A DNA stretch of 58,076 nucleotides from Mizuhopecten yessoensis (GCF_002113885.1 NW_018408763.1:327007-385082), one strand, 5' to 3'. Positions 1,374-54,734 are shown, counted from the first letter of the stretch. Numbers and translations are program-made. The notes: generated by a model not told the origin, from the sequence alone.

Positions 1374-1461
1374 TAAACATTCACCCCTGAAATTCCAAAT
1401 GAGCTATTCCAACCTTTGAATCGGAGGATTACAAATGTGTCTTCAGGGGTGAATGAGTTAA
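1374..1461. mobile_element. 83-bp TTAA hairpin MITE, subfamily A (left end degenerate)
   Basis: cattcacccctgaa...ttcaggggtgaatgagttaa; lies about 50 bp from the splice acceptor. Confidence 0.85.
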
Positions 1462-2549
1462 TCAGATTTTGAACAATATAATTAACTCTTTATCTTTTGG
1501 AAAATATTTCCATTTTAGATGATTTTAATTTGATTGATTTTTTTCCAGATTTTGATTTGGAAACTAAGATGATTTATAATAAAACTGATAAATTAACGTA
1601 AAAGTATTAGAAAACAATTATAATGAGAACTGGTAACGGTAATACTTTAGATTTAATAACGATAATATCAACATTGTGCATCATGGTACCATACAACAGA
1701 CAGACAAGCCTAAGACACCAATGCTGGATCTCGTCTTAGAATTCTAAATATTAAACTGTTTTAGGAATTTAACAAGTCAGATCTGTAAAGTGCAGATTAT
1801 AAGTAAGCCCTTCACAAACTACATTTATAAAGCAGGGTTATACTGGTGTTTACTATTATTTCAGATTTTTTGGATAATTTTGTCCACAGTCATTCAATCA
1901 ACTACCTGTATTACCATTTCTTCAAATTAACGTTTTATATCAAAGCTTTAGAGGAGATGAAGAAAACAATAGGATATCTTACACTAGAATTCTTCAGTCC
2001 TAGATTTTCACTAACAACCATTCAGCATTTCTATTAATGTGGCATAAATCAAACTCAACAAGAAGCTTTCTTCCAAGATTCAGAAAGACACAGAGTAAAA
2101 CAGTGACACGAACCAACGTATTAAATCTTGCTAAAACATATACAGCATTATAACTCTATCATCAAAGTCTGGTAGTGTTGTCTGGGCATTTATTACAAAC
2201 ATTTCGGCCCCTGTATTAGTCAATGTCACAGAGAAGCTTTACTTAAAGACACACACGACTAACAAGCAATACATTTGGTAACGAAATGTAACACGAAACA
2301 ACAATGTCGGCATAAAATTGTCGTTTGTTCGTCGGATCTCCATGGTGATCCTTTTATTCTCAATGATGTTGTAACCACATGTTTTCGTTAATTGAGCGAT
2401 GAAGCTTTCAACATGATACCGACATAACTCTTGTTAATTATACCTATAAAAACACTACTGTGCTTTCTCTCAAGTTACGGTGAATACTCTCCAGCTTATT
2501 CTCTGCTTACCATTGTACTATAAAAATATCAAATCCACCTAACTTTATT

Positions 2550-2715
2550 ACATATGACCATCTGGTGCATTTAGATGGGGCCCAAAGAACCACACCCACC
2601 ACACTTTTTAAATGTGACCATGTATGCTATAGATTTGGACCAAAGAATCACATCCTGAAGACTTTTTAAATGTGCATGACCATGTGGATTTAGAGGGGCG
2701 AAAAGAGCAAATTCC
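2550..2715. repeat. Degenerate ~60-bp tandem repeat, 3 copies
   Basis: tgaccat...ttaga..ggg.ccaaagaa...actttttaaatgtg recurs. Confidence 0.6.
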
Positions 2716-3435
2716 TCCTCAAATCCTGGATTTTTTTAAATTTTTGGTCTCGCAGGTATTTTCTGGATATCTTACTATATATCTGTCCCTTCTAATTGAC
2801 AGATTCTAATTACCCGCTAGTACTAGACTGTGTTGAGTATGTGGTACTCTTCTACTTATGTTTGTAACAATGTAATGATAATTACTTATAATTATCACTC
2901 TAACCTTCCATCCTCTTGTGTCGATTTATATTCTATATCGCAGAACAAAGTCTTAAAATATCCAGAAAGTCATCTGACGATACAGACGGCGCAATTAACT
3001 GTCCAGAACTAGGTCACAAAGACACTGAAGAAAAATCTGAGATAAGTCGCGTTACGAACAAGTCTTCAATTTGCCTTCGTAATATTGCGAACCTTTACTG
3101 TAATTCTGTTGCTTCACATTGCAGCACAATGTTGATGGCAGCGGAGTGACACCTCCGGATGATTGCTACACGAGTGGATCACAATACTAACACTAACCGC
3201 CATAGCCTTCCCATTGGACCAATAGAATGCTGCTCTAAATCCCCCATTGTTCGATTACCTCCAAATTTGATTTAGAACGGAAAACCACAACTAGACAATT
3301 CCCAGCGTTTGTTCCAGTACGTAAAATGGTTCGCGGTGTGGAAAGACAAAAGAAGTTATTCAATTATCTCAAGTCTAGCTAATTTGTAAGAGATCATCTC
3401 ACTGTTATTGAGTTCTGTTGTAGTAAGGTTTATAA

Positions 3436-4720
3436 AGGGACTAGGGGAAACAGGAACCACAGACACTAAAGGGTACAGCCCACTTATACAGAGTATACAC
3501 CAGATTTGCATAGGGACTAGGGGAAACAGGAACCACAGACACTAAAGGGTACAGCCCACTTATACAGAGTATACATCAGATTTGTATAGGGACTAGGGGA
3601 AACAGGAAACCATAGACACTAAAGGGTACAGTCCACTTATACAGAGTATACACCAGATTTGTATAGGGACTAGGGGAAACAGGAACCACAGACACTAAAG
3701 GGTACAGCCCACTTATACAGAGTATACATCAGATTTGTATAGGGACTAGGGGAAACAGGAAACCATAGACACTGAAGGGTACAGCCCACTTATGTAGGGA
3801 GCTGTGTTAGGGGAAACAGGAACCACAGACACTAAAGGGTACAGCCCACTTATACAGAGTATCCACCAGATTTGTATAGGGACTAGGGGAAACAGGAACC
3901 ACAGACACTAAAGGGTACAGCCCACTTATACAGAGTATCCACCAGATTTGTATAGGGACTAGGGGAAACAGGAAACCATAGACACTGAAGGGTACAGCCC
4001 ACTTATGTAGGGAGCTGTGTTAGGGGAAACAGGAACCACAGACACTAAAGGGTACAGCCCACTTATACAGAGTATCCACCAGATTTGTATAGGGACTAGG
4101 GGAAACAGGAACCACAGACACTAAAGGGTACAGCCCACTTATACAGAGTATCCACCAGATTTGTATAGGGACTAGGGGAAACAGGAACCACAGACACTAA
4201 AGGGTACAGCCCACTTATACAGAGTATCCACCAGATTTGTATAGGGACTAGGGGAAACAGGAAACCATAGACACTAAAGGGTACAGTCCACTTATACAGA
4301 GTATACACCAGATTTGCATAGGGACTGGGGGAAACAGGAAACCATAGAAACTGAAGGATACAGCAGACTATATAGGGATCTGTTTTAGGGGAAACAGGAA
4401 ACCATAGAAACTGAAGGATACAGCAGACTATATAGGGATCTGTTTTAGGGGAAACAGGAAACCATAGAAACTGAAGGATACAGCAGACTATATAGGGAGC
4501 TGTGTTAGGGGAAACAGGAACCACAGACACTAAAGGGTACAGCCCACTTATACAGAGTATACACCAGATTTGCATAGGGACTAGGGGAAACAGGAAACCA
4601 TAGAAACTGAAGGATACAGCAGACTATATAGGGAGCTGTGTTAGGGGAAACAGGAAACCATAGAAACTGAAGGATACAGCAGACGTATACAGAGTATACA
4701 CCAGATTTATATAGGTACTC
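3436..4720. repeat. Composite satellite of 76/77-bp and 60-bp units
   Basis: Unit agggactaggggaaacaggaaccacagacactaaagggtacagcccacttatacagagtatacaccagatttgtat (3436, 3512, ...), interleaved with a 60-bp variant. Confidence 0.95.
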
Positions 4721-4924
4721 ATGGATACAGTAGTCTTATATAGGAAGATACAGCAGGCTTATACAAGAGACCCAGCAAACTGGGGATACAGGATATTTCT
4801 GACAAACAGTGAAGAATACAGTAGACTTGAAATATATACCAGGTCTATATCGGAAGATACAGGAAAATTTATATAGAAGCATACAGGAGATTCATGAAGA
4901 GGGGGATACAGGATATTTATATAG

Positions 4925-6912
4925 AGGGATACAAGAGATTTATAGAAAGGGATAAAGGAGATTTATAGAGAGGGATACAGGAGATTTATAGAGATGGATA
5001 CAGGAGATTTATAGAGAGGGATAAAGGAGATTTATAGAGAGGGATACGGGAGATTTATAGAGAGGGATAAAGGAGACTTATAGAGAGGGATAAAGGAGAT
5101 TTATAGAGAGGGATACGGGAGATTTATAGAGAGGGATAAAGGAGACTTATAGAGAGGGATACGGGAGATTTATAGAGAGGGATAAAGGAGACTTATAGAG
5201 AGGGATACAGGAGATTTATAGAGAGGGATAAAGGAGACTTATAGAGAGGGATAAAGGAGATTTATAGAGAGGGATACGGGAGATTTATAGAGAGGGATAA
5301 AGGAGATTTATAGAGAGGGATACGGGAGATTTATAGAGAGGGATAAAGGAGACTTATAGAGAGGGATACGGGAGATTTATAGAGAGGGATAAAGGAGACT
5401 TATAGAGAGGGATACAGGAGATTTATAGAGAGGGATAAAGGAGACTTATAGAGAGGGATAAAGGAGATTTATAGAGAGGGATACGGGAGATTTATAGAGA
5501 GGGATAAAGGAGATTTATAGAGAGGGATACGGGAGATTTATAGAGAGGGATAAAGGAGACTTATAGAGAGGGATACGGGAGATTTATAGAGAGGGATAAA
5601 GGAGACTTATAGAGAGGGATACAGGAGATTTATAGAGAGGGATAAAGGAGACTTATAGAGAGGGATAAAGGAGATTTATAGAGAGGGATACGGGAGATTT
5701 ATAGAGAGGGATAAAGGAGATTTATAGAGAGGGATACAGGAGATTTATAGAGAGGGATACGGGAGATTTATAGAGAGGGATAAAGGAGACTTATAGAGAG
5801 GGATACGGGAGATTTATAGAGAGGGATAAAGGAGACTTATAGAGAGGGATACAGGAGATTTATAGAGAGGGATAAAGGAGACTTATAGAGAGGGATAAAG
5901 GAGATTTATAGAGAGGGATACGGGAGATTTATAGAGAGGGATAAAGGAGATTTATAGAGAGGGATACGGGAGATTTATAGAGAGGGATAAAGGAGACTTA
6001 TAGAGAGGGATACGGGAGATTTATAGAGAGGGATAAAGGAGACTTATAGAGAGGGATACAGGAGATTTATAGAGAGGGATAAAGGAGACTTATAGAGAGG
6101 GATAAAGGAGATTTATAGAGAGGGATACGGGAGATTTATAGAGAGGGATAAAGGAGATTTATAGAGAGGGATACGGGAGATTTATAGAGAGGGATAAAGG
6201 AGACTTATAGAGAGGGATACGGGAGATTTATAGAGAGGGATAAAGGAGACTTATAGAGAGGGATACAGGAGATTTATAGAGAGGGATAAAGGAGACTTAT
6301 AGAGAGGGATAAAGGAGATTTATAGAGAGGGATACGGGAGATTTATAGAGAGGGATAAAGGAGATTTATAGAGAGGGATACGGGAGATTTATAGAGAGGG
6401 ATAAAGGAGACTTATAGAGAGGGATACAGGAGATTTATAGAGAGGGATAAAGGAGACTTATAGAGAGGGATAAAGGAGATTTATAGAGAGGGATACAGGA
6501 GATTTATAGAGAGGGATACAGGAGATTTATAGAGAGGGATACGGGAGATTTATAGAGAGGGATAAAGGAGACTTATAGAGAGGGATACGGGAGATTTATA
6601 GAGAGGGATAAAGGAGACTTATAGAGAGGGATACAGGAGATTTATAGAGAGGGATAAAGGAGACTTATAGAGAGGGATAAAGGAGATTTATAGAGAGGGA
6701 TACGGGAGATTTATAGAGAGGGATAAAGGAGACTTATAGAGAGGGATACAGGAGATTTATAGAGAGGGATAAAGGAGACTTATAGAGAGGGATAAAGGAG
6801 ATTTATAGAGAGGGATACGGGAGATTTATAGAGAGGGATAAAGGAGACTTATAGAGAGGGATACGGGAGATTTATAGAGAGGGATAAAGGAGACTTATAG
6901 AGAGGGATACAG
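4925..6912. repeat. 23-bp purine-rich minisatellite (~86 copies) with a 9-mer (207-bp) higher-order period
   Basis: Unit agagagggata(aa/ca/cg)ggaga(t/c)ttat. Confidence 0.97.
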
Positions 6913-7279
6913 GAAATGTATATAGAGGGACACAGAAGACTATATAGGGCAGTGATATAAATGGGAGTGCCTTATAAATGATACAGCAGACATTGTATAG
7001 AGGTTGTTGAACTTGGTCATGGTACTGGTTGTAGACACATACAAATGTTTGGTTATTAATTGGATAAAACAGATATATACTTTAAACGCTGTTATACACA
7101 ACCAAATGTGATGACGTCTATTGATTTTAAATACTGTCAATGCTGCCTGATCGGATAAAAACGGATAAAAACATCATCAAAGACGACAAGAGCTGGAATT
7201 AGAGTCAATGTCTGGTCTGTCATCAATAAACATTACAAGGAATCTCCTTGCAGTAAAAATAGATCTAGGTCACCAACGG

Positions 7280-8284: not shown

Positions 8285-8375
8285 TTAACCCATTCACCCC
8301 TGAAGACACATATGAACTCTTCCATTTCAAAAATTGGAATAGTTCATTATAAAATTTCAGGGGTGAATGAGTTAA
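8285..8375. mobile_element. 83-bp TTAA hairpin MITE, subfamily A (reverse orientation)
   Basis: ttaa-cccattcacccctgaagacaca...ttcaggggtgaatgag-ttaa; 91 bp including both TTAA. Confidence 0.9.
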
Positions 8376-11266: not shown

Positions 11267-11357
11267 TTAACTCATTCACCCCTGACATTTCATAATGAAC
11301 TATTCCAACCTTTGATTTGGGAAAGTTCAAATGTGACTTCAGGGGTGAATGGGTTAG
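11267..11357. mobile_element. 83-bp TTAA hairpin MITE, subfamily A
   Basis: ttaactcattcacccctgacatttcataatgaactattccaac...ttcaggggtgaatgggttag. Confidence 0.9.
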
Positions 11358-12170: not shown

Positions 12171-12880
12171 TGATGACTTCCACCCCCAATGATAGGGGAA
12201 CAGAACCTGGCCTCACTTATAAAAACAGACACCCAAAAGAAAGTTAATGATCCTAAGCCAACACTGGTAGCTGTCGTGTTAATAATTCCACTGGTAACCA
12301 AGACAAACCTTTAAGTCTTCCTTTGTGAATTTTAAATTGTGCTCAAGTGACCATTGTGTTGCCCATTCTCGTTATATTCAATTTAAAAATGTGTAAACAT
12401 AATGCCATCGTCGGTGTGGTAATATAATCAAATTGATTGGCGTTATCAGATCATCTTTTTATCTAGGACAATATTGACGAGTTTCTATAGAGAACAGTTT
12501 ATTAGAAAGTCAATAATGTTCACAAGTCCTCATACACGTGGCCAGAATAACAACGATCTTATTCAAATGGCAGATTTCTTTCAAATAGAAATTTTATCTA
12601 CGGTTTACTTTGATTCTAATTTCAACAGGTAACTGAAAACTGGGGTAATCAATTTTGTCAATGCATGGATAACTATATATCCCAACAAAATATACAGGGA
12701 AGCCTTGACAAATTCAGTCAATGGATGTCTGCTTTGGACCGTAAATATGTTCAAGGTTTGTTGTCATGCCAATTTATATATTGGTAGGAGGTAAGGGGAT
12801 ATGAGGAAGAGGCAAAGGTTGGAGATAGTGTGTTGGGTATAGGAGTTAGTTGGGGACAGGAACAGGGTTGGTGGGGGGGG

Positions 12881-13126
12881 NNNNNNNNNNNNNNNNNNNN
12901 NNNNNNNNNNNNNNNNNNNNNNNNNNNNNNNNNNNNNNNNNNNNNNNNNNNNNNNNNNNNNNNNNNNNNNNNNNNNNNNNNNNNNNNNNNNNNNNNNNNN
13001 NNNNNNNNNNNNNNNNNNNNNNNNNNNNNNNNNNNNNNNNNNNNNNNNNNNNNNNNNNNNNNNNNNNNNNNNNNNNNNNNNNNNNNNNNNNNNNNNNNNN
13101 NNNNNNNNNNNNNNNNNNNNNNNNNN
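12881..13126. other. Assembly gap flanked by poly-G
   Basis: 246 Ns between G runs. Confidence 0.99.
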
Positions 13127-13365
13127 GGGGGGGGGCATGGGGCATGAAATAGAGGCTATAATCGGGGTTAGGGGTTTAGAACATCTTAGGTTTCGGGACA
13201 AAAATATGTGTTTAAAAAGAAATGAGAGGTATAGAGCTACTGTGAGGATGAATAGAAAATGATTGTCAGACCTAATGCTTTTTTCATTTTGATGTCGTGA
13301 CATGATTTTTGGTTGATTTCTCTCTAAATTTCTTCATAGTTGTATTAACTTCAATATGTTTTAAT

Positions 13366-15104: not shown

Positions 15105-15820
15105 ATCATGGTTCCTGGTAGGTTACGAAGGTTTGTGATGGTCACCATGGTTCCTGGTGGGTTACCATGGTTTGTGAGGGTTACCAAGGTTCCTGGTGGG
15201 TTACCAAGGTTCCTGGTGGGTTACCATGGTTCCTGGTGGGTAACCAAGGTTCCTGGTGGGTTACCAAGGTTCCTGGTGGGTTACCAAGGTTCCTGGTGGG
15301 TTAGCATGGTTCCTGGTGGGTTACCATGGTTCCTGGTGGGTTACCAAGGTTCCTGGTGGGTTAGCATGGTTCCTGGTGGGTTACCAAGGTTCCTGGTGGG
15401 TTACCATGGTTCCTGGTGGGTAACCATGGTTCCTGGTGGGTTAGCATGGTTCCTGGTGGGTAACCATGGTTCCTGGTGGGTTAGCATGGTTCCTGGTGGG
15501 TTACCAAGGTTCCTGGTGGGTTAGCATGGTTCCTGGTAGGTTACAAAGGTTCCTGGTGGGTTACCAAGGTTCCTGGTGGGTTAGCATGGTTCCTGTTGGG
15601 TTACCAAGGTTCCTGTTGGGTTACCAAGGTTCCTGTTGGGTTACCAAGGTTCCGGGTGGGTTAGCAGGGTTCCTGGTGGGTAACAATGGTTCCTGGTGGG
15701 TTCGCATGGTTCCTGGTAGGTTACAAAGGGTCCTGGTGGGTTAGCATGATTCCTGGTGGGTAACCATGGTTCCTGGTGGGTTACCAAGGTTCCTGGTGGG
15801 TTACCAAGGTTCCTGAGGGT
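15105..15820. repeat. 20-bp minisatellite, ~35 copies
   Basis: ggttcctggtgggtta(c/g)ca(a/t). Confidence 0.97.
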
Positions 15821-16825: not shown

Positions 16826-17563
16826 TACATTACAGCATGTCTATATCTGTTTACATTACAGCGTGTCTATATCTGTTTACATTACAGCATGTCTAGATCT
16901 ATAGCTGTTTACATTACAGCATGTCTATATCTGTTTACATTACAGCATGTCTAGATATATATCTGTTTACATTACAGCGTGTCTAGATATATAGCTGTTT
17001 ACATTACAGTGTGTCTATATCTGTTTACATTACAGCATGTCTAGATATATATCTGTTTACATTACAGCGTGTCTAGATATATAGCTGTTTACATTACAGC
17101 GTGTCTATATCTATTTACATTACAGCGTGTCTATATCTGTTTACATTACAGCATGTCTATAGCTGTTTACATTACAGCATGTCTATAGCTATTTACATTA
17201 CAGCATGTCTATATCTGTTTACATTACAGCATGTCTATAGCTATTTACATTACAGCGTGTCTATAGCTATTTACATTACAGTGTGTCTATAGCTATTTAC
17301 ATTACAGCGTGTCTATATAGCTATTTACATTACAGCGTGTCTATATCTGTTTACATTACAGCATGTCTATAGCTATTTACATTACAGTGTGTCTATAGCT
17401 ATTTACATTACAGCGTGTCTATATAGCTATTTACATTACAGTGTGTCTATAGCTGTTTACATTACAGCATGTCTATAGCTATTTACATTACAGTGTGTCT
17501 ATAGCTATTTACATTACAGCACGTCTATAGCTGTTTACATTACAGCGTGTCTATAGCTATTTA
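16826..17563. repeat. 26-bp minisatellite, ~27 copies
   Basis: tttacattacagc(a/g)tgtctata(t/g)ct(g/a). Confidence 0.95.
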
Positions 17564-20500
17564 CCCAATGTCCTTCCGTACAATAACCAACCTGACTGAT
17601 ACAGTATCAATACATTACAGCGTGTCTATAGATATTTACACGTACCCAATGTCCTCCCGTACAAGTGGTGCCTTACTAACATTAGCCCACAGAATAATAG
17701 AATGACTTCCTGTCTTGTATGGTCACAATACTCCCCGTGTCAACATTTATCATTACTTTGCCTCGTATTATCCCTCTTCCCGAGCTATGTAACAATGTGG
17801 ACGCCCCCCTCATACACAGTCCCGTCGGCCGTTCATCCCCAGGTGAGTTGATAATAACAACTTAATCATTTTGTCACGATGTCAAATTGATTCCAATGTT
17901 CATTCCGGCCTAGAGCGCTCTAGCGTGGGTAAATCGAGGTTTTATTGACAACGTTTTGTATCGAGTTGAAAGTGACAAAATAAACACAGAGGAAAACAAC
18001 ACTGAATTTTGTAAGGGTTCATTGAACAGCGACCAGCCTTCCTGCACGGTTGACTGATTGGATGGTTTAAAGGTAGGCTGATCATTGCCACATCAATACG
18101 GAGCCCAGCATCTGCGGGTCGCAAGGAATCGATCAGCGGAATGTACGGGAGGACGACTTTATCGGAACGCCTGAGCGCAAGATGAGGGTAGTTACAACGT
18201 AACGCACAATTATTACTATTATCTATGGGACCTTCCCGACATCAACGGGCGGTAATTGAGGAAAATTTATTGCCAAATGTCGAGAGAGGAGGGGACAAAA
18301 TGGTGAAAAATGGAGGAAAAAGTGAAAACGAACCGCGAGTTGCTGTACTCCATTATACAACCACCGATATTTGACAAGGCTATTCTACACCAGGGTTTTA
18401 AATTATTTGTATTTTTCCGTCTTGAGAACAGCACGATGGTTGAAGTAATGGTGCTTCATTCTGGTTACATATGGGTTTAGTAGCCAACAGACAATAAATC
18501 AAATATTTACATTAAATTCTGTGCTGCTGTGCAAGTCACATTAGTCTTAAAACGCATTATGTTAATCTGTTACAGTATTGACCTAACATGAGATCCGTAT
18601 TAAAACCCACAAATAAAGGAATTTACAATTAAATATAAATATTAAAATATTAACTTTCGTTTAAATTACGTAGCTGTAAAAACAAGGGAGACTATACGCA
18701 GGAAGAAGGCGTGAACCAGCAGATCGTCGATATGTAGTTCAATAGACAAGAAAGGCTTAAAGCAAACAAAACATTAAAATATCTGTTACTTGCCTAAGTA
18801 AACACTTCAATATCTTCAAATGAAAAGTAAAAATAAAAATATTTAGATTAAATGCCATATTTATCTGTGCTTATAATAGCTTTTACAATGTCCGACACCT
18901 CAATCGAAATTCTGTTCAATATATGTCTCAAGGGCCTGAATGACATTAACCCTAGAAAATGCACATAGACCAGTCCGCATATAGACTGGACAAGTCTACA
19001 GGACTAGATAAAGCGGAGGTAGGTAAGACCTGAATACAATTGTGTCTGTCATTTAGAAAGTATTATCGCTTAATATTGATATCATTGTTGAATATTTTCC
19101 AAGTGGTTTAAAAACCTACATTCCTACAGACCTACAATGAACTGCACCAAACAATACAGAAGGTGATTCCAAAACAAAGAACAAGGGATGATGGCAGAAA
19201 ACAGCTGTACATAGCTGTCAAAATATCAGCATTCATTTCAAGGAGACAAAATTATTGATTCAGATTAACTAGACTCTTCCCAAGTCCTTATAGCATATGG
19301 ATTTTTTTATTCTCACTTTATGATATATTTTTTTTTTAGCCATTATACATACAAAATATGGGAAAAGAAATAACTCATCTTTTCAGTCTAGAAGCAATGT
19401 TGAAACTTATTTAATACAGAATTCTACTGTGGTATAAATCGACCTGGCCCGAACCACGTGTCTGGGAGTCGATGACAATAAGCTTAACTTTTGCTCTAAT
19501 GATAAGTTGGAGTGGTCTGGTGCCTGTCAAAGATTTCGAGACAGATCAGAATCCTTCAAGTGTTTGATTCATATGGTAAATGGTCTGCATGTCCTTGACA
19601 GCGAGGAGTGACTGTCTGGGTTCCACCGTAGCAGACCTGGGGGGGTGTAACGATGAAAGGTAGAAACAGCTCAAACACGTCACACCTACCATTCACGTAG
19701 CCAAACCTGTTACAATAGATGTTGTCAAACTAAACCGAGAAACAATTTAAGAATATCTTTTTTTTTTGAGTTTCTAAAAATATATTAACAAGATGAGCTA
19801 CGGTGTTACCGATTACTATTTGAGACAACCTTAGAATAAGCATGTTTTCAATAAGAGTAACTCTAATGAGGCGACTACTGCGGTGCTGCCTGCAAAGTGC
19901 GGTTATTCCTGCGTCTTCAGATTAGGAAATTACCAAAATTGAATCTGCAGCCCCATTGCAGCACTAGGGACCTCATTTTTCCTACAGTGCTATATAATGC
20001 TGTTGAACTGTCTGCCAATGTTCCTGGCCCAAAGTTCTGTTTGGCATCTACGTTACATGGAGTATTCACAAAGGGTCACTGTGTAAATATCACTACAAAG
20101 AAATTATGAAGAATTGCAAGTACAACCCTTTGGCATGTTATTTTCCTGTTAGGACAGACTCTTTCACCTCTAAATAGCAAGCCTCATTCTGTTTTCTTCA
20201 GGGCTGATAAAACCATACACAGAATTTTCCTGGAAAAAAAACTTTGGCATAATTTCTGGGAGAATTTCTTCTCACTGAAACAGAATCTTAGGATCATCAG
20301 GATAAAAATGTACAAAACATTTCACAGGACGTCTTTATTTGGGCTCTGCAGCCAGAGCTCGAGGGTCAATGTCTGAACTTGTCCCAGGACAAACAGGTAT
20401 AGGGACTGTTTGATTTATTATTCGCCTTCAATGTTCCAAAGCCTGCTTGTCCCGTAAATCGCAAAACAATTCCGAAGTCGAACATAAAGCTCCCCACACC

Positions 20501-24792: not shown

Positions 24793-24883
24793 TTACCTCA
24801 TTCACTCCTGAAATTTCATAATGAACTATTCCAAACTTTGAATTGGAAGAGTTCAAATGTGTCTTCAGGGGTGAATGAGTTAA
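24793..24883. mobile_element. 83-bp TTAA hairpin MITE, subfamily A
   Basis: ttacctcattcactcctgaaatttcataatgaac...ttcaggggtgaatgagttaa. Confidence 0.9.
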
Positions 24884-29280: not shown

Positions 29281-29371
29281 TTCACTTATTCACCCCTACA
29301 TATTTAAACTGGATTTGCCCAGTCTTTGATTTGGTATGTTTCAAATGTGACTTTAGGGGTAAATAGGTTCA
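29281..29371. mobile_element. 83-bp hairpin MITE, subfamily B (degenerate ends)
   Basis: cttattcacccctacatatttaaactggatttgcccagtctttgatttgg...tttaggggtaaatagg. Confidence 0.8.
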
Positions 29372-31630: not shown

Positions 31631-31725
31631 TTAACTCATTCACCCCTGACGACACAATTGGACTCTTCCAATTCAAAGGTTGGAAAAGTTCATTATGAAA
31701 TTTCAGTGGTGAGTGAAGGAGTTAA
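31631..31725. mobile_element. TTAA hairpin MITE, subfamily A (reverse, 4-bp insertion)
   Basis: ttaactcattcacccctgacgacac...ttcagtggtgagtgaaggagttaa. Confidence 0.85.
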
Positions 31726-32000: not shown

Positions 32001-32091
32001 TTAATTCATTCACCCCTGAAATTTCATAATGAACTATTCCAACCTTTGAATTGGAAGAGTTCAAATGTGTCTTTAGGGGTGCATGAGTTAA
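32001..32091. mobile_element. 83-bp TTAA hairpin MITE, subfamily A
   Basis: ttaattcattcacccctgaaatttcataatgaactattccaacctttgaattggaagagttcaaatgtgtctttaggggtgcatgagttaa. Confidence 0.92.
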
Positions 32092-32696: not shown

Positions 32697-32757
32697 ATTC
32701 ACCCCAATTCAAAGGTTGGAATAGTTTATTATGAAATTTCAGGGGTGAATGAGTTAA
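32697..32757. mobile_element. Internally deleted subfamily A MITE (reverse)
   Basis: attcacccc joined directly to aattcaaaggttggaatag...ttcaggggtgaatgagttaa. Confidence 0.8.
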
Positions 32758-33151: not shown

Positions 33152-33309
33152 GATATCTACTCTGTACCCCTCTTATACACAGCCGTTGTACAGTACCAAT
33201 CAGCCCCTATCGTTCATGACAGCAAAGTCCACTTACCTACAAAGACAAAAAAGATCAAGAACATTAGTTTCATTGAAATACTGTATGTTTGGGACATGGT
33301 TATACTATA

Positions 33310-35480: not shown

Positions 35481-35570
35481 TTAACTCATTCACCCCTACA
35501 TATCTAAACTGGACTTGCCCAGTCATTGATTTGGTGAGATTCAAATGTGACTTTAGGGGTGAATGATACA
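35481..35570. mobile_element. 83-bp hairpin MITE, subfamily B
   Basis: ttaactcattcacccctacatatctaaactggacttgcccag...tttaggggtgaatga. Confidence 0.85.
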
Positions 35571-36721
35571 AGATTATCCTGTACTTTTGATAGATTTCCT
35601 TTGCTGTCTTGATATGAAGGATTCATAACTGGCATTTTTTTAGGCAGCAAACTTAGCAAAAATACTTCAACTCCTAATAACAGCTTTATTGCAGTTTGTA
35701 AATCAGAAACTTCACTAACTTTAGGCCTGAAACAAGCAATTCATTTAGACTTGATAGCCTCCCTGCGTATTGTTTTGATAGGGAGAAGATTTCTCCAGGA
35801 GTTTTGCTCTACATGAAAATGTCTATACAAAACTTTAATGGAATCAGATCAAAAGAATGCAATATTAATCAACATTGAAAGGCCGGCGTTCGTGTAGCAT
35901 GATAGCAGACGGACAAAAATAGCCAAGTTCTCTTGGAACCTCGAATTTCAAAGAAAACCTGAGGTGGGTACCGAGTACAAAACCTCAATGTAACAAGCTT
36001 TAGAGATTTTGTTAAAGAATTACATTATCCACACAAACCTACAAACAAGCCACAGAGACCATGAGAGGATGGCAAGTCTCTAAGTCTGAGGTTCGTCTTA
36101 GTTCCGTATTTTCTGATCTATCTGTTCAGGTCTGTTCACAGGTATCAGACAACTTTGTTTGTTTTCTATGTTTGCCGTGCATGCCAAAAAAAACACCTTG
36201 CAAACAAACGGAAAAAAAGGCTAACACATATCATCGTAATAGGTCTGTAGATTCCTATTCGTACGATGTTAGCGACAGACGCCTGGATATTTGAAGTACA
36301 TTATAAGCATCGCAATGCCTGTACATGCAATAGTACTTTCTGGGGATTTATTTCAGTCTTTGACATGAAATTGAAGCAAACAAAACGCAAATACATACAA
36401 AAACGGCCAATATCATCTGTAAGTCTAGGTTTCCTGTCCAAGCGTTGATCATACCTTGTTGGACGTTTGAAGAACTTAGAAACCTGTGGCTCTACATACG
36501 TGGCCATTATGGGTTGTATTACAGCATTTTGACATGCAAATAAAAACTAATTTCACGTTGCATCATTTTCACATGTAAATGTTACACGATGCCGTCATTT
36601 CCAGGCCGCAGATTTCTATGTACATGGTCATTATGTTTCCATCACTGTGTGACACACACGTCTCATACTTCAGCTATATTGTTCTGTGATTTATTCACAA
36701 ACTATTTAGTCTGTAAGGTTT

Positions 36722-36812
36722 TTAACTTTTTCACCCCTGAAAACACATTTGAACTCTTCCAATGCAAAGGTTGGAATAGTTCATTATGAAATTTCAAGGG
36801 TGAATATGTTAA
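36722..36812. mobile_element. 83-bp TTAA hairpin MITE, subfamily A (reverse)
   Basis: ttaactttttcacccctgaaaacacatttgaactc...ttcaagggtgaatatgttaa. Confidence 0.88.
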
Positions 36813-36917: not shown

Positions 36918-38218
36918 GAATTCAGTCAGGGCAACAAGGAATCAGTCAGGGCAACAAGGAATCAGTCAGGGCAACAAGGAATCAGTCAGGGCAACAAGGA
37001 ATCAGTCAGTACAACAAGGAATCAGTCAGGGCAACAGGGAATAAGTCAGTACAACAAGGAATCAGTCAGGGCAACAAGGAATCAGGCAGGGGCAACAAGG
37101 AATCAGTCAGTACAACCAGGAATCAGTCAGGGCAACAAGGAATCAGGCAGGGGCAACAAGGAATCAGTCAGTACAACCAGGAATCAGTCAGGGCAACAAG
37201 GAATCAGTCAGTGCAACAAGGAATCAGTCAGGGCAACAAGGAATCAGTCTGGGCAACAAGGAATCAGTCAGGGGCAACAAGGAATAAGTCAGTACAACAA
37301 GGAATCAGTCGGGGCAACAAGGAATCAGTCAGTACAACAAGAAATCAGTCAGGACAACAAGGAATCAGTCAGTACAACAAGAAATCAGTCAGGACAACAA
37401 GGAATCAGTCAGGACAACAAGGAATCAGTCAGTACAACAAGAAATCAGTCAGGACAACAAGGAATCAGTCAGGACAACAAGGAATCAGTCAGGACAACAA
37501 GGAATCAGTCAGTACAACAAGGAATCACTCAGTACAACAAGGAACCAGTCAGTACAACAAGGAATCAGTCAGGTAAACAAGGAATCAGTCAGGACAACAA
37601 GGAATCAGTCAGGACAACAAGGAATCAGTCAGGGCAACAAGGAATCAGGCAGTACAACAAGGAATCAGGCAGGGCAACAAGGAATCAGTCAGGGCAACCA
37701 AGAATCAGTCAGGGCAACAAGGGATCAGTCAGGGCAACAAGGAATCAGTCAGTGCAACAAGGAATCAGTCAGGTCAACAAGGAATCAGTCAGTCCAACAA
37801 GGAATCAGTCAGTACGACAAGGAATCAGTCAGGGAAACAAGGAATCAGTCAGGGGCAACAAGGAATAAGTCAGTACAACAAGGAATCAGTCGGGGCAACA
37901 AGGAATCAGTCAGTACAACAAGAAATCAGTCAGGACAACAAGGAATCAGTCAGTACAACAAGAAATCAGTCAGGACAACAAGGAATCAGTCAGTACAACA
38001 AGAAATCAGTCAGGACAACAAGGAATCAGTCAGGACAACAAGGAATCAGTCAGTACAACAAGGAATCAGTCAGGTCAACAAGGAATCAGTCAGTACAACA
38101 AGGCATCAGTCAGTACGACAAGGAATCAGTCAGGGCAACAAGGAATCAGTCAGTACAACAAGGAATCAGTCAGGGCAACAAGGAATCAGTCAGGGCAACA
38201 AGGAATCAATCAGGGCAA
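36918..38218. repeat. 20-bp minisatellite, ~65 copies
   Basis: ggaatcagtcag(gg/ta/ga)caacaa. Confidence 0.97.
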
Positions 38219-39978: not shown

Positions 39979-40069
39979 CTAACTCTTTCACCCCTAGGTA
40001 ACTTGAGTAGACTCTACCATACATTCATCTGGATGAGTCCACTATGATTTACAGTGGTGAAAGGGTTAA
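39979..40069. mobile_element. 83-bp hairpin MITE, subfamily C (reverse)
   Basis: Its reverse complement aligns without gaps to 54644-54734. Confidence 0.88.
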
Positions 40070-44221: not shown

Positions 44222-44312
44222 TTAACACATTCAGCCCTACAATTACATTTGAACCTTACCAAATCAAAGACTGGACAAGTCCAGTTTCAAACTGTAGGGG
44301 TGAATAAGTTAA
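44222..44312. mobile_element. 83-bp TTAA hairpin MITE, subfamily B (reverse)
   Basis: ttaacacattcagccctaca...ccagtttcaaactgtaggggtgaataagttaa. Confidence 0.85.
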
Positions 44313-45895: not shown

Positions 45896-45986
45896 TTATC
45901 TCATTCAACCCTGAAGACATATTTGAACTCTTCCAAATCAAAGGTTGGAATAGTTCATTATGAAATTTCAGGGGGGAATGAGTTAA
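45896..45986. mobile_element. 83-bp TTAA hairpin MITE, subfamily A (reverse)
   Basis: ttatctcattcaaccctgaagacat...ttcaggggggaatgagttaa. Confidence 0.88.
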
Positions 45987-49329: not shown

Positions 49330-50357
49330 TTTAGCTCCACGCAAGCTCTACTCGCAAGCTCTACTCGCAAGCTCAGTAGAGCGAGGAACTGGGAAGCTGG
49401 GGGTCAGGTTTGATCCTAGATGGAAGCACACTACTATCTTCCTCTAACAAATGGTATCCGTGGCTCATATCCGTGGCTCTCCCTTTGGTGACAGGGAATT
49501 AGAACCTGGTTTTTGTGGTGTTCAAGAAGCGCAGATTTGTAACAGTACATGGGATCATGCCCCTTCACCTTATAGCTTCCCGCTAGAGGGAATTTCCATT
49601 TCGGTAGACCGGTGCACTGTTAAGCTAGGGGTCACAGGTTCGATCCCCAGCGTTACCACACTGCTCTCTTTCCTTACACAAATGGTTTCTATGGCCTTCC
49701 CTGTGGGGACAGGGTGGTCTCTGTGGCCTTCCCTGTGGGGACAGGGTGGTCTCTGTGGCCTTCCCTGTGGGGACAGGGTGGTCTCTGTGGCCTTCCCTGT
49801 GGGGACAGGGTGGTCTCTGTGGCCTTCCCTGTGGGGACAGGGTGGTCTCTGTGGCCTTCCCTGTGGGGACAGGGTGGTCTCTGTGGCCTTCCCTGTGGGG
49901 ACAGGGTGGTCTCTGTGGCCTTCCCTGTGGGGACAGGGTGGTCTCTGTGGCCTTCCCTGTGGGGACAGGGTGGTCTCTGTGGCCTTCCCTGTGGGGACAG
50001 GGTGGTCTCTGTGGCCTTCCCTGTGGGGACAGGGTGGTCTCTGTGGCCTTCCCTGTGGGGACAGGGTGGTCTCTGTGGCCTTCCCTGTGGGGACAGGGTG
50101 GTCTCTGTGGCCTTCCCTGTGGGGACAGGGTGGTCTCTGTGGCCTTCCCTGTGGGGACAGGGTGTTAAAACCTTGGTTGTTCATTGTGATATTCACAGGA
50201 GAACACATTTAAAATGGGGAGAGTATAGTCAGGCAGATTTTGATCATACATGGAATCACCTTCTTGCTTCACACTAGAGGGCTAGAAAGTTACGTTAACC
50301 CGACAATCTGGGGGTCACTGGTTCAATCCCCATAGGTACTGCTCTCTTACCTATAGA
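49330..50357 (+). mobile_element. Tandem array of short tRNA-containing LTR-like units with PBS/PPT-like signals (non-autonomous TRIM, Ajax-like)
   Basis: Three tRNA-like segments carry B-boxes (49407, 49637, 50320), each followed by ct(g/a)ct(c/a)tctt. Two end CA-AA-TGGT (49448, 49679). A purine tract aaaatggggagag (50211-50223) precedes the third. The two inter-LTR segments are homologous. Confidence 0.6.
49683..50162. repeat. 32-bp minisatellite, exactly 15 copies
   Basis: tggtctctgtggccttccctgtggggacaggg; contains the hairpin ccctgt-gggg-acaggg. Confidence 0.97.
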
Positions 50358-51322: not shown

Positions 51323-51361
51323 TTATCTTCCCCCAGACCAAACAACAACTATAATATAACA

Positions 51362-51810
51362 TCCTAACACTACCAACCACTTCCTGACTGCTACCCCCCA
51401 ACCCCTACTGTGATACAGTGTCAGACCTATCACTACCAACCACTTCCCAACTGCTACCCCCCAACCCCTACTGTGATACAGTGTCAGACCTTAATCACTA
51501 CCAACCACTTCCCGACTGCTACCCCCCATCCCCTACGGTGATACAGTGTCAGACCTATCACTACCAACCACTTCCTGACTGCTACCCCCCAACCCCTACT
51601 GTGATACAGTGTCAGACCTAACACTACCAACCACTTCCCTACTGCTACCCCCCAACCCCTACTGTGATACAGAGTCAGACCTAACACTACCAACCACTTC
51701 CCGACTGCTACCCCCCAACCCCTACTGTGATACAGTGTCAGACCTATCACTTCCAACCACTTCCCTACTGCTACCCCCCAACCCCTACTGTGATACAGTG
51801 TCAGACCTAC
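51362..51810. repeat. 63-bp minisatellite, 7 copies
   Basis: cactaccaaccacttcctgactgctaccccccaacccctactgtgatacagtgtcagacctat. Confidence 0.95.
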
Positions 51811-52169
51811 CACTGTCAGTGAGAATCTCGTTATATTCCTGTAAAACTCACACAGCAAGCTAACAAGGCCGAGGATAAAACCATGCTGAAGAACAACAGC
51901 TAATAATTACAACAAACTGTTAACATTTCATAGCCACGACAAAGGCAGCCAGCCTTGTAGCATTGTAATACCAGGTTTATAGCCACCATCTGCTTCTCAC
52001 TAAACACCATTTCAACATTTACATTTCCACATGAAATGATGATGCTTTATTTTACAAACATCTCACTTCATATTATGATGCACATAACATAAATACCGCT
52101 GAAAATTTGGGTAGATGTCTTGAAATTATGATGTCAGTTAATTTCCAATTATTTGATAGATGACAACAT

Positions 52170-52444
52170 ACCATCTGTAATAAGCCCAGGGGGACAACAT
52201 GTATCTCTCACTCACATCACCAGAATTGGTTTATATCAGCAAAATGAAATAAAATGAGCTCGCATTTCTGAACAACTGCAATATATTTGGGTGGGCTTAT
52301 TACCATGCATGAGCTTATAACCAGGCATGGGCTTATTACCAGGCATGGGCTTATTACCAGGCATGAGCTTATTACCAGGCATGGGCTTATTACCAGACAT
52401 GAGCTTATTACCAGGCATGTGCTTATTGCAGGATGATTACGGTA
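52170..52444. mobile_element. Tc2/pogo-like MITE with ~8 copies of the 18-bp subterminal repeat
   Basis: Left end taccatctgtaataagccc; right end (gggcttattaccaggcat)n..gcttattgcaggatgattacggta. Confidence 0.7.
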
Positions 52445-53631
52445 GATAGGATACCCAAGCAATTCAACTACATTTGTAATCGTACCTCGATTTAAATGTT
52501 ACATTGCTTTGAATGTAAACTGTTTTTCGAAAACGGTTCAATATCATTCAACTATCGATGTTGATGGGGTGGGTGTTAGCGGTGGGGAAGGGGGCCTCAA
52601 CTTTCATTGTAATTTGGAGAGATTAACAGATTTGACCAGTATCATCTGAGCAAGGAGTGGGTAAAGGTTGTAAGTGGGTTTGTGTGTGTTAAGAAGGGGT
52701 TGGATGGGGATTCATTGTAATATGGAGAGAAGAAAATAATCTGTTCCAAAGTATCATGTTACCATATAGCCTCAATTTGATTCTAACAAGAACAACCGGA
52801 TACAACATATACAAAAGACACTTCAAAATTCCAAAAAACTTTTCGTATGAAGCTAGCATATACAGATGGCAGTTACCGACACATATACACAAATTCTGAG
52901 CCAAGGAAAAAATTAAACTGTCAGATAAAAGTCTGGGTGATATTCATAAAAGTTCAAAATTTTACAACAACTTAATTCAAAATTGAAACACAAGCTATCC
53001 TGAAGTGCTTAGTAGGGTTCACTTATGTCAGCTCTTCATTATTTACGGCCTTGTGTTTTCATGCACGAGTTCCTAGCTATTACGTTTCTATGGTAACAAT
53101 GTAAACACTCGGATAACTTGTGAGGAGAAATTTGCAATAAATTCTGGCCCTGGTTGGGTGAACTATAAATTCCATCAGATGGTAACGAAACGACTGAATC
53201 AGTGTATATATAAAAGTAAGCACAGAATTCATACAATACAGAAACAGAGTGTCTATATAGCAGGCAAAACAGAATGCATACACGTGGAACAGAAAGTTTG
53301 AGGACGAACCTGTCTGTAAGTCAGAAAAGAATTTTGGGTAAGATGCTGTCTATATTATAGTCAAAATAAGATATAGACGATGGCAAACTTGTGAAAGCTT
53401 GTTAATGAACTCCAGATTACCATGACCTTACCTGACCTATAATTACACTGACTTTAATCAATCTAACAATGACCTTAGCGACCCCCATAACCTCTCACCT
53501 TGCCATTAGATTTACCTCCCTCTTATCTCCCTACTCAACCTTGACTGTTAAAAGGCCAGAACTACCTACAGAGCTCTTGACACTATCAGCTTCATCAGCA
53601 GCTATCCCTGTTTAATTACTGAGATCCATGT

Positions 53632-53722
53632 TTAACTCTTTCACCCCTGAAGACAGGTTTGAACTCTTCCGATTCAAAGGTTGGAATAGTTCATAATGAA
53701 ATTTCAGTGGTGATTGAGTTAA
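53632..53722. mobile_element. 83-bp TTAA hairpin MITE, subfamily A (reverse)
   Basis: ttaactctttcacccctgaagacagg...ttcagtggtgattgagttaa. Confidence 0.9.
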
Positions 53723-53973
53723 AAGTTCTACCTCTTTGCCTGATGGTTATCAGTGGACATCAATGATAGTGTTTAATGTGTTTTTTACTTACATCCCATA
53801 CTGCTGTCTATAAAACACCATCACCACAGGGCATGGTGTCAAACATGGACTCCAATACTTACACCACAGAATACATGTATATATATGTATCTATATGGTT
53901 GCTAGGGAACTATGGTCAGTAAGGAATAAAACAGAACAGAAAGTGAGAAAACAAATAATTAGTCACTGCTGAC

Positions 53974-54511
53974 TTAAGGAGGTATGCTACCATATACACT
54001 GTACCTGTGGTATGCGATAGAGTTATCTCCACTAAGAATATATGCTACCTTACACACTAAATCTGTGTTTTTTGATAGAATTATCTCCCCTAAGAATATA
54101 TGCTACCTTACACACTAAATCTGTAGTTTTTGATAGAATTATCTCCCCTAAGAACATATCATACCTTACACACTAAATCTGTAGTTTTTGATAGAATTAT
54201 CTCCCCTAAGAATATATGCTACCTTACACACTAAATCTGTGGTTTTTGATAGAATTATCTCCCCTAAGAACATATCCTACCTTACACACTAAATCTGTAG
54301 TTTTTGATAGATTTATCTCCCTTATACTTAAAATTTGTGTTAAAAGTTATCTCCCTTAAGGGTGTCTGTTACCTTATTGTTATTCATAAAGCATTTCCTA
54401 TCCGAAAGAGTTTCACACTAAAGCATAATGTGTTAAGTAGCATATATCCTTAAGGGAGACAACTTTTACAGCAAACATAAATGCAAGACATAAGGTAGCA
54501 TATACCCTTAA
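53974..54511. mobile_element. 58-bp TTAA-bounded mini-element present as a tandem array (~6 copies) plus inverted copies
   Basis: Array unit taagaatatatgctaccttacacactaaatctgtagtttttgatagaattatctcccc. The inverted copy at 54450-54511 reads ttaagggagacaact...aaggtagcatatacccttaa. Confidence 0.7.
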
Positions 54512-54643
54512 GTCCTCATAATCCATATTTGATTGCAAGGATTAGATTCATCATATTTTCCAATGATTTTGGAAAGCAATCATATTTCATATAGTTATAT
54601 TTTAACTGATGCATTTTTTAAAAGAAACCAATGGCAATGCTCC

Positions 54644-54734
54644 TTAACCCTTTCACCACTGTAGACCATAATGGACTCATCCATATCAATGCATGGTAGA
54701 GACTACTAACGTTACATAGGGGTGAAAGGGTTAA
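54644..54734. mobile_element. 83-bp TTAA hairpin MITE, subfamily C
   Basis: ttaa-ccctttcaccactgtagaccataatggactcatcca...taggggtgaaaggg-ttaa. Confidence 0.9.

What the first reader, a model, noticed from the sequence alone, without database searches (positions are those of the whole stretch)
1374..54734. Fifteen tiny TTAA hairpin elements: three diverged subfamilies that keep an 83-bp length and a two-stem fold
Seen: copies at 1374, 8285, 11267, 24793, 31631, 32001, 32697 (deleted), 36722, 45896, 53632 (A); 29281, 35481, 44222 (B); and 39979, 54644 (C). That is about one per 4 kb, in both orientations. Intact copies measure 91 bp from TTAA to TTAA in all three subfamilies, even though C needs two compensating 1-bp indels to align with A. 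The architecture is TIR (~13-16 bp) / ~10-bp spacer / internal inverted repeat (tgaactattccaa...ttggaagagttca in A; tggactcatcca...tggtagagtcta in C) / 8-10-nt loop. Subfamily substitutions are mirrored on both arms (cctgaa/ttcagg vs cctaca/tgtagg; ctcattcacc/ggtgaatgag vs ccctttcacc/ggtgaaaggg). Established: TTAA targets, C-starting TIRs and bipartite terminal plus subterminal inverted repeats are typical of piggyBac. Inference: these are minimal ends-only elements below the DNA persistence length. The fixed size suggests a geometric constraint (transpososome helical phasing) or mobilisation through a folded single-stranded or cruciform substrate. A tyrosine-recombinase (Crypton-like) partner is an alternative.
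Basis: partly seen in the sequence, partly recalled or inferred. Interest (0 to 1): 0.7.

Follow-up and report, generated by a model that had tools for sequence, protein, structure and literature searches.

The report
Scallop piggyBac miniature transposons (83 bp)
The fifteen tiny hairpin-like elements are real: they belong to one very abundant family of ends-only piggyBac "jumping gene" remnants in a scallop genome, an ordinary kind of element already described in corals and humans, and shared ancestry is enough to explain their uniform 83-bp size.

Summary
All 15 copies are at the stated coordinates, and a profile search finds no others in the window. They belong to one dispersed family with three subfamilies (A, B, C). 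Genome-wide, 4,064 copies have both 14-nt ends perfect, which scales to very roughly 34,000 copies in the 988-Mb genome. The modal length is 91 bp from TTAA to TTAA.

It is a piggyBac MITE family.
- **Target-site duplication:** an A copy nested in a B copy proves it. Removing 87 bp restores a 91-bp B copy with a single TTAA.
- **Parent element:** a 2.6-kb TTAA-flanked element carrying a DDE_Tnp_1_7 transposase shares its 13-nt TIR with subfamily C. It also shares the end-specific bases next to the TIR: 7 nt at the 5' end and about 26 nt at the 3' end.

Placed in the piggyBac orientation, the three consensus sequences align without any gap. Equal length is therefore inherited. About 2.5 indels would be expected, so finding none has P of about 0.08.

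The two-stem fold is strong only in A, weak in C and lost in B.

Coral CMITEs (about 100 bp) are the closest known parallel. First readers noted the same family in at least seven other windows of this genome. Verdict: a new member of a known kind. No active partner for A/B was identified.

The parts
1372..1461 (-). Subfamily A copy, 90 bp, one TTAA/terminus degraded
8285..8375 (+). Subfamily A copy, 91 bp, TTAA at both ends, 6 differences from the A consensus
11267..11357 (-). Subfamily A copy, 91 bp, 7 differences from consensus, one TTAA mutated
24793..24883 (-). Subfamily A copy, 91 bp, 3 differences from consensus; folds as a two-stem hairpin (z -6.3)
29281..29371 (-). Subfamily B copy, 91 bp, 9 differences from consensus, both TTAA mutated
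31631..31725 (+). Subfamily A copy, 95 bp because of a 4-bp insertion inside one TIR
32001..32091 (-). Subfamily A copy of the young A1 variant (A instead of G at position 18); at least 40 genomic copies are 96-98% identical to it
32697..32757 (+). Subfamily A remnant: first 7 nt lost and about 23 bp deleted internally
35481..35571 (-). Subfamily B copy, 91 bp, one terminus degraded
36722..36812 (+). Subfamily A copy, 91 bp, TTAA at both ends, 7 differences
39979..40069 (-). Subfamily C copy, 91 bp, 9 differences
44222..44312 (+). Subfamily B copy, 91 bp, TTAA at both ends, 9 differences; its fold lacks the A-type inner stem
45896..45986 (+). Subfamily A copy, 91 bp, 5 differences
53632..53722 (+). 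Subfamily A copy, 91 bp, TTAA at both ends, 7 differences
54644..54734 (+). Subfamily C copy, 91 bp, TTAA at both ends, 3 differences; its two ends match the 5' and 3' ends of the autonomous piggyBac in L064

Best explanation
These are copies of one high-copy family of piggyBac-derived MITEs. Each is 83 bp of element plus a duplicated TTAA. They carry no gene and consist only of the two transposon ends.

Shown:
- They insert at TTAA and duplicate it.
- Their termini (C[T/C]C[A/T]TTCACC...) are the TIR type of a clade of autonomous piggyBac elements in the same genome.
- Subfamily C carries, on its two different arms, the bases that lie next to the TIR at the 5' and 3' ends of one 2.6-kb piggyBac lineage.
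- Subfamilies A, B and C are homologous along their whole length and align without gaps.

Inferred:
- A piggyBac DDE transposase supplied in trans binds the 13-17-bp TIRs and subterminal bases. It excises the double-stranded element and reinserts it at another TTAA (cut and paste).
- The family grew from a few master copies in successive waves. B predates A at one locus, and the A1 variant is the youngest.
- The uniform 83-bp size is mainly inherited from a single ancestral internal-deletion derivative. It may be reinforced because almost every base of so small an element lies in or between transposase-binding sites, so shortened copies cannot move again.
For: - The 15 window copies are confirmed.
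- Genome-wide there are 4,064 copies with perfect 14-nt ends at 76-106 bp, against 46 at 46-75 bp and 14 at 107-137 bp, with 0 in the controls.
- Of the first 50 listed, 36 are exactly 91 bp and the rest are 89-95 bp.
- Nested insertion in L138: an A copy sits at the internal TTAA of a B copy. Removing 87 bp restores a 91-bp B copy with one TTAA and 6 differences from the B consensus.
- The genome has at least 123 PF13843 matches.
- The full-length piggyBac copies L064 (2,623 bp) and L065 (2,592 bp) are TTAA-flanked with the TIR CTCTTTCACCACT. A 509-aa ORF of this family, read from a 5'-truncated third copy of the family (locus L061), hits PF13843 at 4e-71.
- C left arm against the piggyBac 5' end is 22/24 identical. 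C right arm against the 3' end is about 33/42.
- In the 11 nt just inside the TIR, the matching arm-to-end comparisons score 7/11 and 10/11, against 4/11 and 4/11 for the crossed comparisons (my in-register hand count on the end sequences printed).
- The consensus sequences align ungapped: A-B 72/91, A-C 59/91, B-C 58/91. One hundred copies align in 91 columns without gaps.
- piggyBac lineages with this TIR type form one clade, SH-aLRT 93 on a quick tree.
- The literature gives TTAA TSD, 12-19-bp TIRs and the C[C/A/T][C/A/T][T/G/A].. start as piggyBac hallmarks (PMC5381638). The minimal functional T. ni ends are 35 + 63 bp (PMC7351741).
Against: - No copy of the C-type parent sampled is fully intact. 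The two with both ends have broken ORFs (305 and 413 aa), and the one with a 509-aa ORF lacks its 5' end.
- No autonomous element with the exact A/B subterminal sequence was found. Only TIR-level matches exist, for example L042/L043 with 12/13.
- The central part of the MITE (about 35 nt) has no counterpart in the autonomous elements. Internal similarity outside the TIR is not significant in an unrestricted search of the 2.6-kb element.
Confidence: 0.85

Rival explanations
1. This is the same piggyBac MITE, but the 83-bp length is actively maintained by selection on transposition. The constraint would be helical phasing or spacing of transposase-binding sites, or the geometry of looping so short a DNA in the transpososome. 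Only copies of this size would be re-mobilised.
For: - There are no indels among about 42 substitutions separating the three consensus sequences, whereas dead copies show 0.06 indels per substitution.
- None of the 60 off-size copies with perfect ends has amplified. Each is unique apart from probable haplotig duplicates.
- Coral CMITE families are also uniform at about 100 bp (PMC2872659).
- Inserting 5 bp into the T. ni right end halves transposition (PMC7351741).
Against: - P(0 indels) is about 0.08, which is not significant.
- All three subfamilies share one ancestor, so there is only one independent observation of this size.
- No other ~75-105-bp family with these termini exists to serve as a replicate.
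- Elements of 2.6 kb with the same ends were also mobilised. Several dispersed TTAA-flanked copies exist.
- A master-copy model explains the lack of amplified variants equally well.
Confidence: 0.25
2. The element is mobilised or stabilised through a folded form. This could be cruciform extrusion or a single-stranded hairpin that brings the two ends together, or a transcribed hairpin RNA with a function of its own. The palindromic interior would be selected for pairing.
For: - Copies fold far better than shuffles, with z from -5 to -8.
- There are two compensatory double changes and one G-C to G-U change in the inner stem between A and C.
- Four of five double-changed pairs between A and C stay complementary (one search counts; the P of about 0.045 is my own binomial calculation from them, at 1/3 per pair).
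- Many deletion derivatives remove the central palindrome symmetrically, as expected if it folds during replication.
Against: - Most of the folding energy comes from the TIRs, which are inverted repeats by definition.
- The inner stem is lost in B and weak in C. Seven of its 17 pairs are broken in B and/or C, and seven are invariant and so uninformative.
- The spacers are non-complementary and reflect the left/right asymmetry of piggyBac ends.
- Known piggyBac chemistry acts on double-stranded ends (PMC7351741).
- The window has no Rfam match.
Confidence: 0.1
3. The elements belong to another TTAA-using or TIR-less system: Kolobok or Sola3 DDE transposons, or a tyrosine-recombinase Crypton-like partner.
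For: Kolobok also makes TTAA duplications (PMC6004289 title and abstract; details from my own knowledge). Other first readers noted Kolobok-like TTAA elements elsewhere in this genome.
Against: - The termini match the piggyBac TIR motif and specific piggyBac elements of this genome, including subterminal bases.
- Cryptons have neither TIRs nor target-site duplications (my own knowledge), yet both are present here.
Confidence: 0.02

Closest known systems
Coral CMITEs (Acropora millepora / A. palmata; Wang, Zhang, Meyer & Matz 2010, PMC2872659)
   Same: - Both are about 100-bp piggyBac-type MITEs with TTAA duplications and 13-14-bp TIRs starting CCCTTTC.
- Both have several families or subfamilies of uniform size.
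- In both, one family shares its TIR and a little adjacent sequence with an autonomous piggyBac (AmiPB1), while the internal region has no known origin.
- Both show occasional adjacent or tandem copies.
- CMITE family VI and scallop subfamily C share the first 9 TIR bases.
   Different: - The scallop element is shorter (83 against about 98 bp without the TTAA).
- It is far more abundant (tens of thousands against about 1,600 copies).
- Its TIRs are better conserved than its interior, the reverse of CMITEs.
- Homology of the internal regions could not be tested, because the CMITE sequences are not in the held text.
Human MER85 (piggyBac PGBD3-derived MITE; PMC2268245, PMC3459987)
   Same: It is an internal-deletion, ends-only derivative of a 2.5-kb piggyBac, dispersed in many copies and flanked by TTAA.
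   Different: MER85 is about 140 bp with hundreds of copies (from my own knowledge of those papers). It is ancient and immobile and has no subfamily structure like the one here.
Minimal engineered T. ni piggyBac ends LE35 + RE63 (Chen et al. 2020, PMC7351741)
   Same: The total of about 98 bp of end sequence is close to the natural 83-bp element. The left and right ends are asymmetric. The terminal ~16 bp are bound by the catalytic part of the transposase, and a palindrome-like subterminal site lies beyond them.
   Different: The scallop arms are nearly equal (about 45/45). The binding sites are not mapped. The conserved central motif (TGRAC-N4-CCA and its complement) is absent from the scallop autonomous elements examined.
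Made1 / hsa-mir-548 (80-bp mariner-derived palindromic MITE in primates)
   Same: It is an ~80-bp, near-palindromic, fixed-size ends-only MITE that folds into a hairpin (from my own knowledge).
   Different: It has a TA duplication and belongs to the Tc1/mariner superfamily. It is known to give rise to microRNAs, and no RNA evidence was obtainable here.

Membership tests
piggyBac superfamily (non-autonomous member / MITE) | Insertion at TTAA with duplication of the TTAA | tested here: met
   In L138 an A copy interrupts a B copy at its internal TTAA. Deleting 87 bp restores a 91-bp B copy with one TTAA. Of 122 collected copies, 99 keep TTAA at both ends, and their flanks are unrelated.
piggyBac superfamily (non-autonomous member / MITE) | TIRs of 12-19 bp that start with C, motif C[C/A/T][C/A/T][T/G/A][T/A/G][T/G/A] (PMC5381638), often CC[C/T]T (PMC2872659) | tested here: met
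   A and B start CTCATT or CCCATT, and C starts CCCTTT. The complementary outer stem is 16-17 bp beyond the TTAA. The strict CCYT form holds only for C and one B arm.
piggyBac superfamily (non-autonomous member / MITE) | Ends derived from, or shared with, an element encoding a DDE_Tnp_1_7 (PF13843) transposase in the same genome | tested here: met
   For C, the L064/L065 elements share the 13-nt TIR plus 7 nt (5') and about 26 nt (3') of end-specific sequence. For A and B only TIR-level matches were found, such as the L042/L043 5' end at 12/13, so the test is inconclusive for those two subfamilies.
piggyBac superfamily (non-autonomous member / MITE) | Precise excision restoring a single TTAA; mobilisation in trans by the transposase | not testable with these tools
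No allelic empty sites were available, and this needs an experiment.
Coral CMITE group (homologous family) | The shared, highly conserved ~75-nt internal region that defines CMITEs | not tested
   CMITE sequences are only in a figure that is not held. The supplement holds protein sequences only. Only the first 9 TIR bases could be compared with family VI.
Structured hairpin element / RNA family | A secondary structure conserved across subfamilies with compensatory changes | tested here: not met
   In the inner helix, 7 pairs are invariant, 2 are compensatory and 7 are broken in B and/or C. B folds differently. The window has no Rfam family at gathering score.
Crypton-like (tyrosine recombinase) element | No TIRs and no target-site duplication; a tyrosine-recombinase partner | tested here: not met
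   TIRs and a 4-bp duplication are present, and the matching partner is a DDE transposase element. The family definition is from my own knowledge.

The most novel reading that the evidence does not exclude
The 83-bp size may be a true optimum for piggyBac mobilisation, not just an inherited size. Scallop and coral lineages would then have independently arrived at ~85-100-bp ends-only elements. In each, a conserved central palindrome of non-transposon origin (here TGRAC-N4-CCA and its complement) would act as a shared subterminal binding or bending site. That site would let the transposase synapse two ends only about eight helical turns apart. On this reading the family is a natural experiment on the minimal piggyBac transpososome.
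Probability: 0.15. Interest if true: 0.45.

Novelty: new member of a known kind. Interest (0 to 1): 0.25.

Why it matters
It resolves a pattern that first readers flagged repeatedly in this genome (at least seven other windows). The "length-locked TTAA hairpins" are one piggyBac MITE family of very roughly 30,000 copies, about 0.3% of the genome.

Practical value:
- It gives a named repeat family for masking and annotating scallop genomes.
- It gives a set of dated insertion waves (B before A, with A1 youngest) that could serve as markers.
- It offers a naturally minimal piggyBac substrate that could inform the design of very small piggyBac vectors, if a cognate scallop transposase proves active.

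It does not reveal a new transposition mechanism.

Tried and rejected
- **Unbiased genome sampling.** I used pattern counts and about 130-bp fetches instead.
- **Partner for A/B.** The 30 fetched piggyBac loci gave only TIR-level matches. The other ~90 transposase matches could not be fetched. A pattern with 'not' codes was considered and dropped, because indel-shifted MITE copies would swamp it.
- **Independent MITE families of similar size.** None derive from the young L032-type piggyBac at 62-92 bp. No other family with CYCWTT termini exists at 75-105 bp: the 14 hits are mutated A/B/C copies plus 4 singletons.
- **Conserved inner motif as a transposase site.** The motif is absent from six autonomous elements.
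- **Internal similarity between MITE and piggyBac in an unrestricted search.** It is not above shuffles. Only the in-register subterminal match is convincing.
- **Rfam at gathering threshold.** No match.
- **Literature.** The terminal sequences appear in no paper. No paper describing this scallop family was found.
- **Rejected ideas.** The Crypton and Kolobok partners, and the 'two compensating indels'.


Full report
**Observation.** Reading the 15 stated positions shows a TTAA-bounded element of about 91 bp at each one. BLAST with the copy at 32001-32091 recovers all of them on both strands, as expected for a near-palindrome. A profile built from 12 copies finds exactly these 15 in the 58-kb window. 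Three copies are damaged:
- 31631-31725 is 95 bp, with a 4-bp insertion in one TIR.
- 1372-1461 is 90 bp, with a degraded end.
- 32697-32757 has lost its first 7 nt and about 23 internal bp.

The window has three runs of N: 709, 12881-13126 and 57004-57221. The 246-N gap lies inside a poly-G run with nine G on each side. It is more than 1.5 kb from any copy, so the finding does not depend on continuity there. I did not try to fill it.

**Genome context.** The window is G000:C5436:327007-385082 of a 987.6-Mb assembly in 82,659 contigs. An earlier follow-up note of this scan calls the genome a scallop (s1-528034). From memory, the size and contig count fit Mizuhopecten (Patinopecten) yessoensis. 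First readers flagged the same 'fixed-length TTAA hairpins' in at least seven other windows.

The window has no convincing coding ORF and is dominated by minisatellites.

**Abundance and length.** I searched with the pattern TTAACYCWTTCACC, a gap, then GGTGAAWGRGTTAA. The reversed controls gave 0 hits throughout.

| Total length | Exact hits |
|---|---|
| 46-75 bp | 46 |
| 76-106 bp | 4,064 |
| 107-137 bp | 14 |

Among the first 50 listed in the main class, the lengths are:

| Length (bp) | 89 | 90 | 91 | 92 | 93 | 94 | 95 |
|---|---|---|---|---|---|---|---|
| Copies | 1 | 4 | 36 | 3 | 3 | 1 | 2 |

The short copies are unique internal deletions, many of them centred on the palindrome. The long copies are internal duplications or composites. 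None has amplified; the few duplicates lie on tiny contigs that look like haplotigs.

Only 3 of 25 copies collected without selection on their ends satisfy the strict pattern. That scales to very roughly 34,000 copies, with a wide interval of about 13,000-160,000, or about 0.3% of the genome. The window, at one copy per 3.9 kb, is therefore several-fold enriched. About 136 kb of piggyBac loci (L031-L062) held none.

**One family, no indels.** I collected 122 copies from the window, from 3-kb loci around near-identical A copies, from 50 pattern hits and from 20 B hits. Because the element is a near-palindrome, either orientation aligns.
For the interior alone the figures are 35% and 53%.
- In the corrected orientation the three consensus sequences are all 91 nt and align without gaps: A-B 72/91, A-C 59/91, B-C 58/91.
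- MAFFT aligns 100 copies of all three subfamilies in 91 columns with no gap.

The 'two compensating 1-bp indels' were thus an orientation artefact. A, B and C descend from a single 83-bp ancestor.

In dead copies the ratio of indel events to substitutions is 0.06 (14/229 and 10/176). The three-branch tree between the consensus sequences has about 42 substitutions. That gives about 2.5 expected indels and P(0) of about 0.08. This is a hint of purifying selection on length at most.

No second, independent family with these termini exists at 75-105 bp to replicate the observation. The young L032-type piggyBac has no 62-92-bp derivative.

**TTAA duplication.** In L138 (G000:C942:1242441-1242780) a 91-bp A copy (81-171) sits inside a B copy, at the TTAA that B carries internally. 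Removing the 83-bp element and one TTAA restores a 91-bp B copy with a single TTAA and 6 differences from the B consensus. This result:
- serves as an internal 'empty site';
- proves the 4-bp TTAA target-site duplication;
- shows A moving after B at that locus.

Of the 122 copies, 99 retain TTAA at both ends. Flanks are unrelated and have background composition, 65% A+T.

**Autonomous relatives.** The genome has at least 123 matches to the piggyBac transposase domain PF13843. Several lineages end in TTAA-C(T/C)C(A/T)TT....

One lineage is informative. L064 (2,623 bp) and L065 (2,592 bp) are TTAA-flanked and have the TIR CTCTTTCACCACT at both ends. A 5'-truncated third copy (L051/L061/L063) carries a 509-aa ORF that matches PF13843 at 4e-71. 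The ORFs in the two-ended copies are broken, at 305 and 413 aa.

The two ends of this lineage differ just inside the TIR, and so do the two arms of subfamily C, in the same way. The C left arm matches the 5' end 22/24. The C right arm matches the 3' end about 33/42, with one gap. In the 11 nt just inside the TIR, I counted identities in register by hand on the end sequences printed:

| | piggyBac 5' end | piggyBac 3' end |
|---|---|---|
| C left arm | 7/11 | 4/11 |
| C right arm | 4/11 | 10/11 |

The non-complementary 'spacers' of the MITE are therefore the left/right asymmetry of a piggyBac. C is an internal-deletion-type derivative of this lineage or a close relative.

The central part of the MITE (about 35 nt) has no counterpart in the autonomous element. 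In an unrestricted search the non-TIR similarity does not exceed shuffles.

For A and B only TIR-level matches were found, for example the 5' end of L042/L043 (CTCATTCGCCCCT, 12/13). L043 has an uninterrupted 593-aa ORF. The lineages with this TIR type cluster together on a quick tree, SH-aLRT 93. Further transposase loci could not be fetched.

**Fold and covariation.** As DNA the free energy is -23 to -26 kcal/mol, with z from -6.3 to -8.2.
- In C, only the TIR stem is stable in the centroid structure.
- In B, the inner stem is replaced by a local palindrome in one arm.

I counted pairs of the A structure on 100 copies.
- **Outer helix (the TIR):** subfamily-level double changes at 6-86, 8-84, 18-74 and 19-73.
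- **Inner helix (17 pairs):** 7 are essentially invariant, so they say nothing about structure. Two show compensatory changes (26-66, 31-60) and one shows G-C to G-U (30-61), all from the single A-versus-C contrast. Seven are broken in B and/or C.

Between the A and C consensus, 4 of 5 double-changed pairs stay complementary (one search counts). The P of about 0.045 is my own binomial calculation from those counts, at 1/3 per pair. Arm-to-arm co-evolution is thus modestly supported.

It is expected for TIRs read by one protein, and B shows it is not obligatory, being asymmetric at position 6. What is conserved in the interior across all subfamilies is sequence: TGRAC-N4-CCA on one arm and its complement on the other. 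That points to recognition by a protein rather than to pairing alone. However, the motif is absent from six autonomous elements, so its role and origin are unknown.

Rfam has no match in the window.

**Mechanism.** The best-supported reading is ordinary trans-mobilisation by piggyBac transposase: double-stranded cut and paste at TTAA. The uniform size is mostly inherited. A real constraint is plausible, because the element is about as small as the minimal functional T. ni ends (35 + 63 bp). In that system a 5-bp insertion in one end halves activity (PMC7351741). The data here cannot show a constraint. The cruciform or single-strand idea is not needed and is weakened by the loss of the inner stem in B and C. 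The Crypton idea is contradicted by the TIRs, the TSD and the DDE partner.

**Comparison with known elements.** Coral CMITEs are the closest parallel. They share these features with the scallop family (PMC2872659):
- a size of about 100 bp;
- TTAA duplications;
- CCCTTTC... TIRs;
- six families of uniform size;
- an internal region of unknown origin;
- one family sharing its TIR and adjacent bases with AmiPB1.

Human MER85 and other piggyBac MITEs are further precedents. The terminal sequences occur in no searched paper, and no paper describes this scallop family. Automated libraries, such as MITE Tracker in PMC10294476, probably contain it unclassified. Repbase and Dfam could not be checked.

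**Verdict.** This is a real, abundant and well-behaved piggyBac MITE family: a new member of a known kind, of modest interest.

Noticed in passing
window 3429-7000, 15107-15815, 16826-17564, 33295-35248, 36922-38218, 49683-50164, 56158-57411: The window is packed with minisatellites (58 TRF rows). Examples are a 46-bp unit x45, a 27-bp unit x66-73, a 20-bp unit x65 and a 10-bp TACATGTGTG array that runs into the second N gap. No convincing protein-coding ORF was seen.
   Followed up: no
window 12872-13135: The 246-N assembly gap is flanked by nine G on each side, so it probably marks a homopolymer that failed to sequence. I did not fill or test it.
   Followed up: partly
L032-L037 (e.g. G000:C2206:881230-885345): Six dispersed piggyBac copies have identical, uninterrupted 591-aa transposase ORFs. 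Four of the six (L032, L034, L035, L037) show 2,347-bp TTAA-flanked ends (TIR CTCTTAGACTGC). This looks like a very recently active autonomous piggyBac, and it has no 62-92-bp MITE derivative.
   Followed up: partly
46 genomic places listed (e.g. G000:C5578:423670-423724): Short derivatives (46-75 bp) keep both TIRs but have lost the central palindrome, often symmetrically. This is the pattern expected from hairpin-stimulated replication slippage, and each deletion is unique.
   Followed up: no
L140 78-266 (G000:C15:737777-737965): Two C copies lie 4 bp apart, each followed by the same CAGTTTA. This suggests duplication of an element together with its flank, or side-by-side insertion, and is reminiscent of the tandem CMITE arrays in corals.
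   Followed up: no
L061 7300-7790 (G000:C5465:33300-33790): The 5'-truncated piggyBac copy abuts a ~500-bp repeat that matches dozens of loci at about 70% identity, often in tandem. It may be a satellite-like or SINE-like family.
   Followed up: no
G000:C942:1553661-1553731, C75588:728-798, C81242:964-1034: Identical deleted MITE copies recur on very small contigs. This suggests that unmerged haplotigs are present in the assembly.
   Followed up: no
L064 (rc) 1004-1090 and 3540-3626: Each end of the autonomous piggyBac repeats part of its own TIR about 45 bp inward. CACTGCAGACCGC is repeated at the 5' end and CACTAAGTAACTTT at the 3' end. The 5' end also has a palindrome (GACCGCT..AGCGGTC) just inside the TIR. 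These are likely subterminal transposase-binding sites.
   Followed up: no
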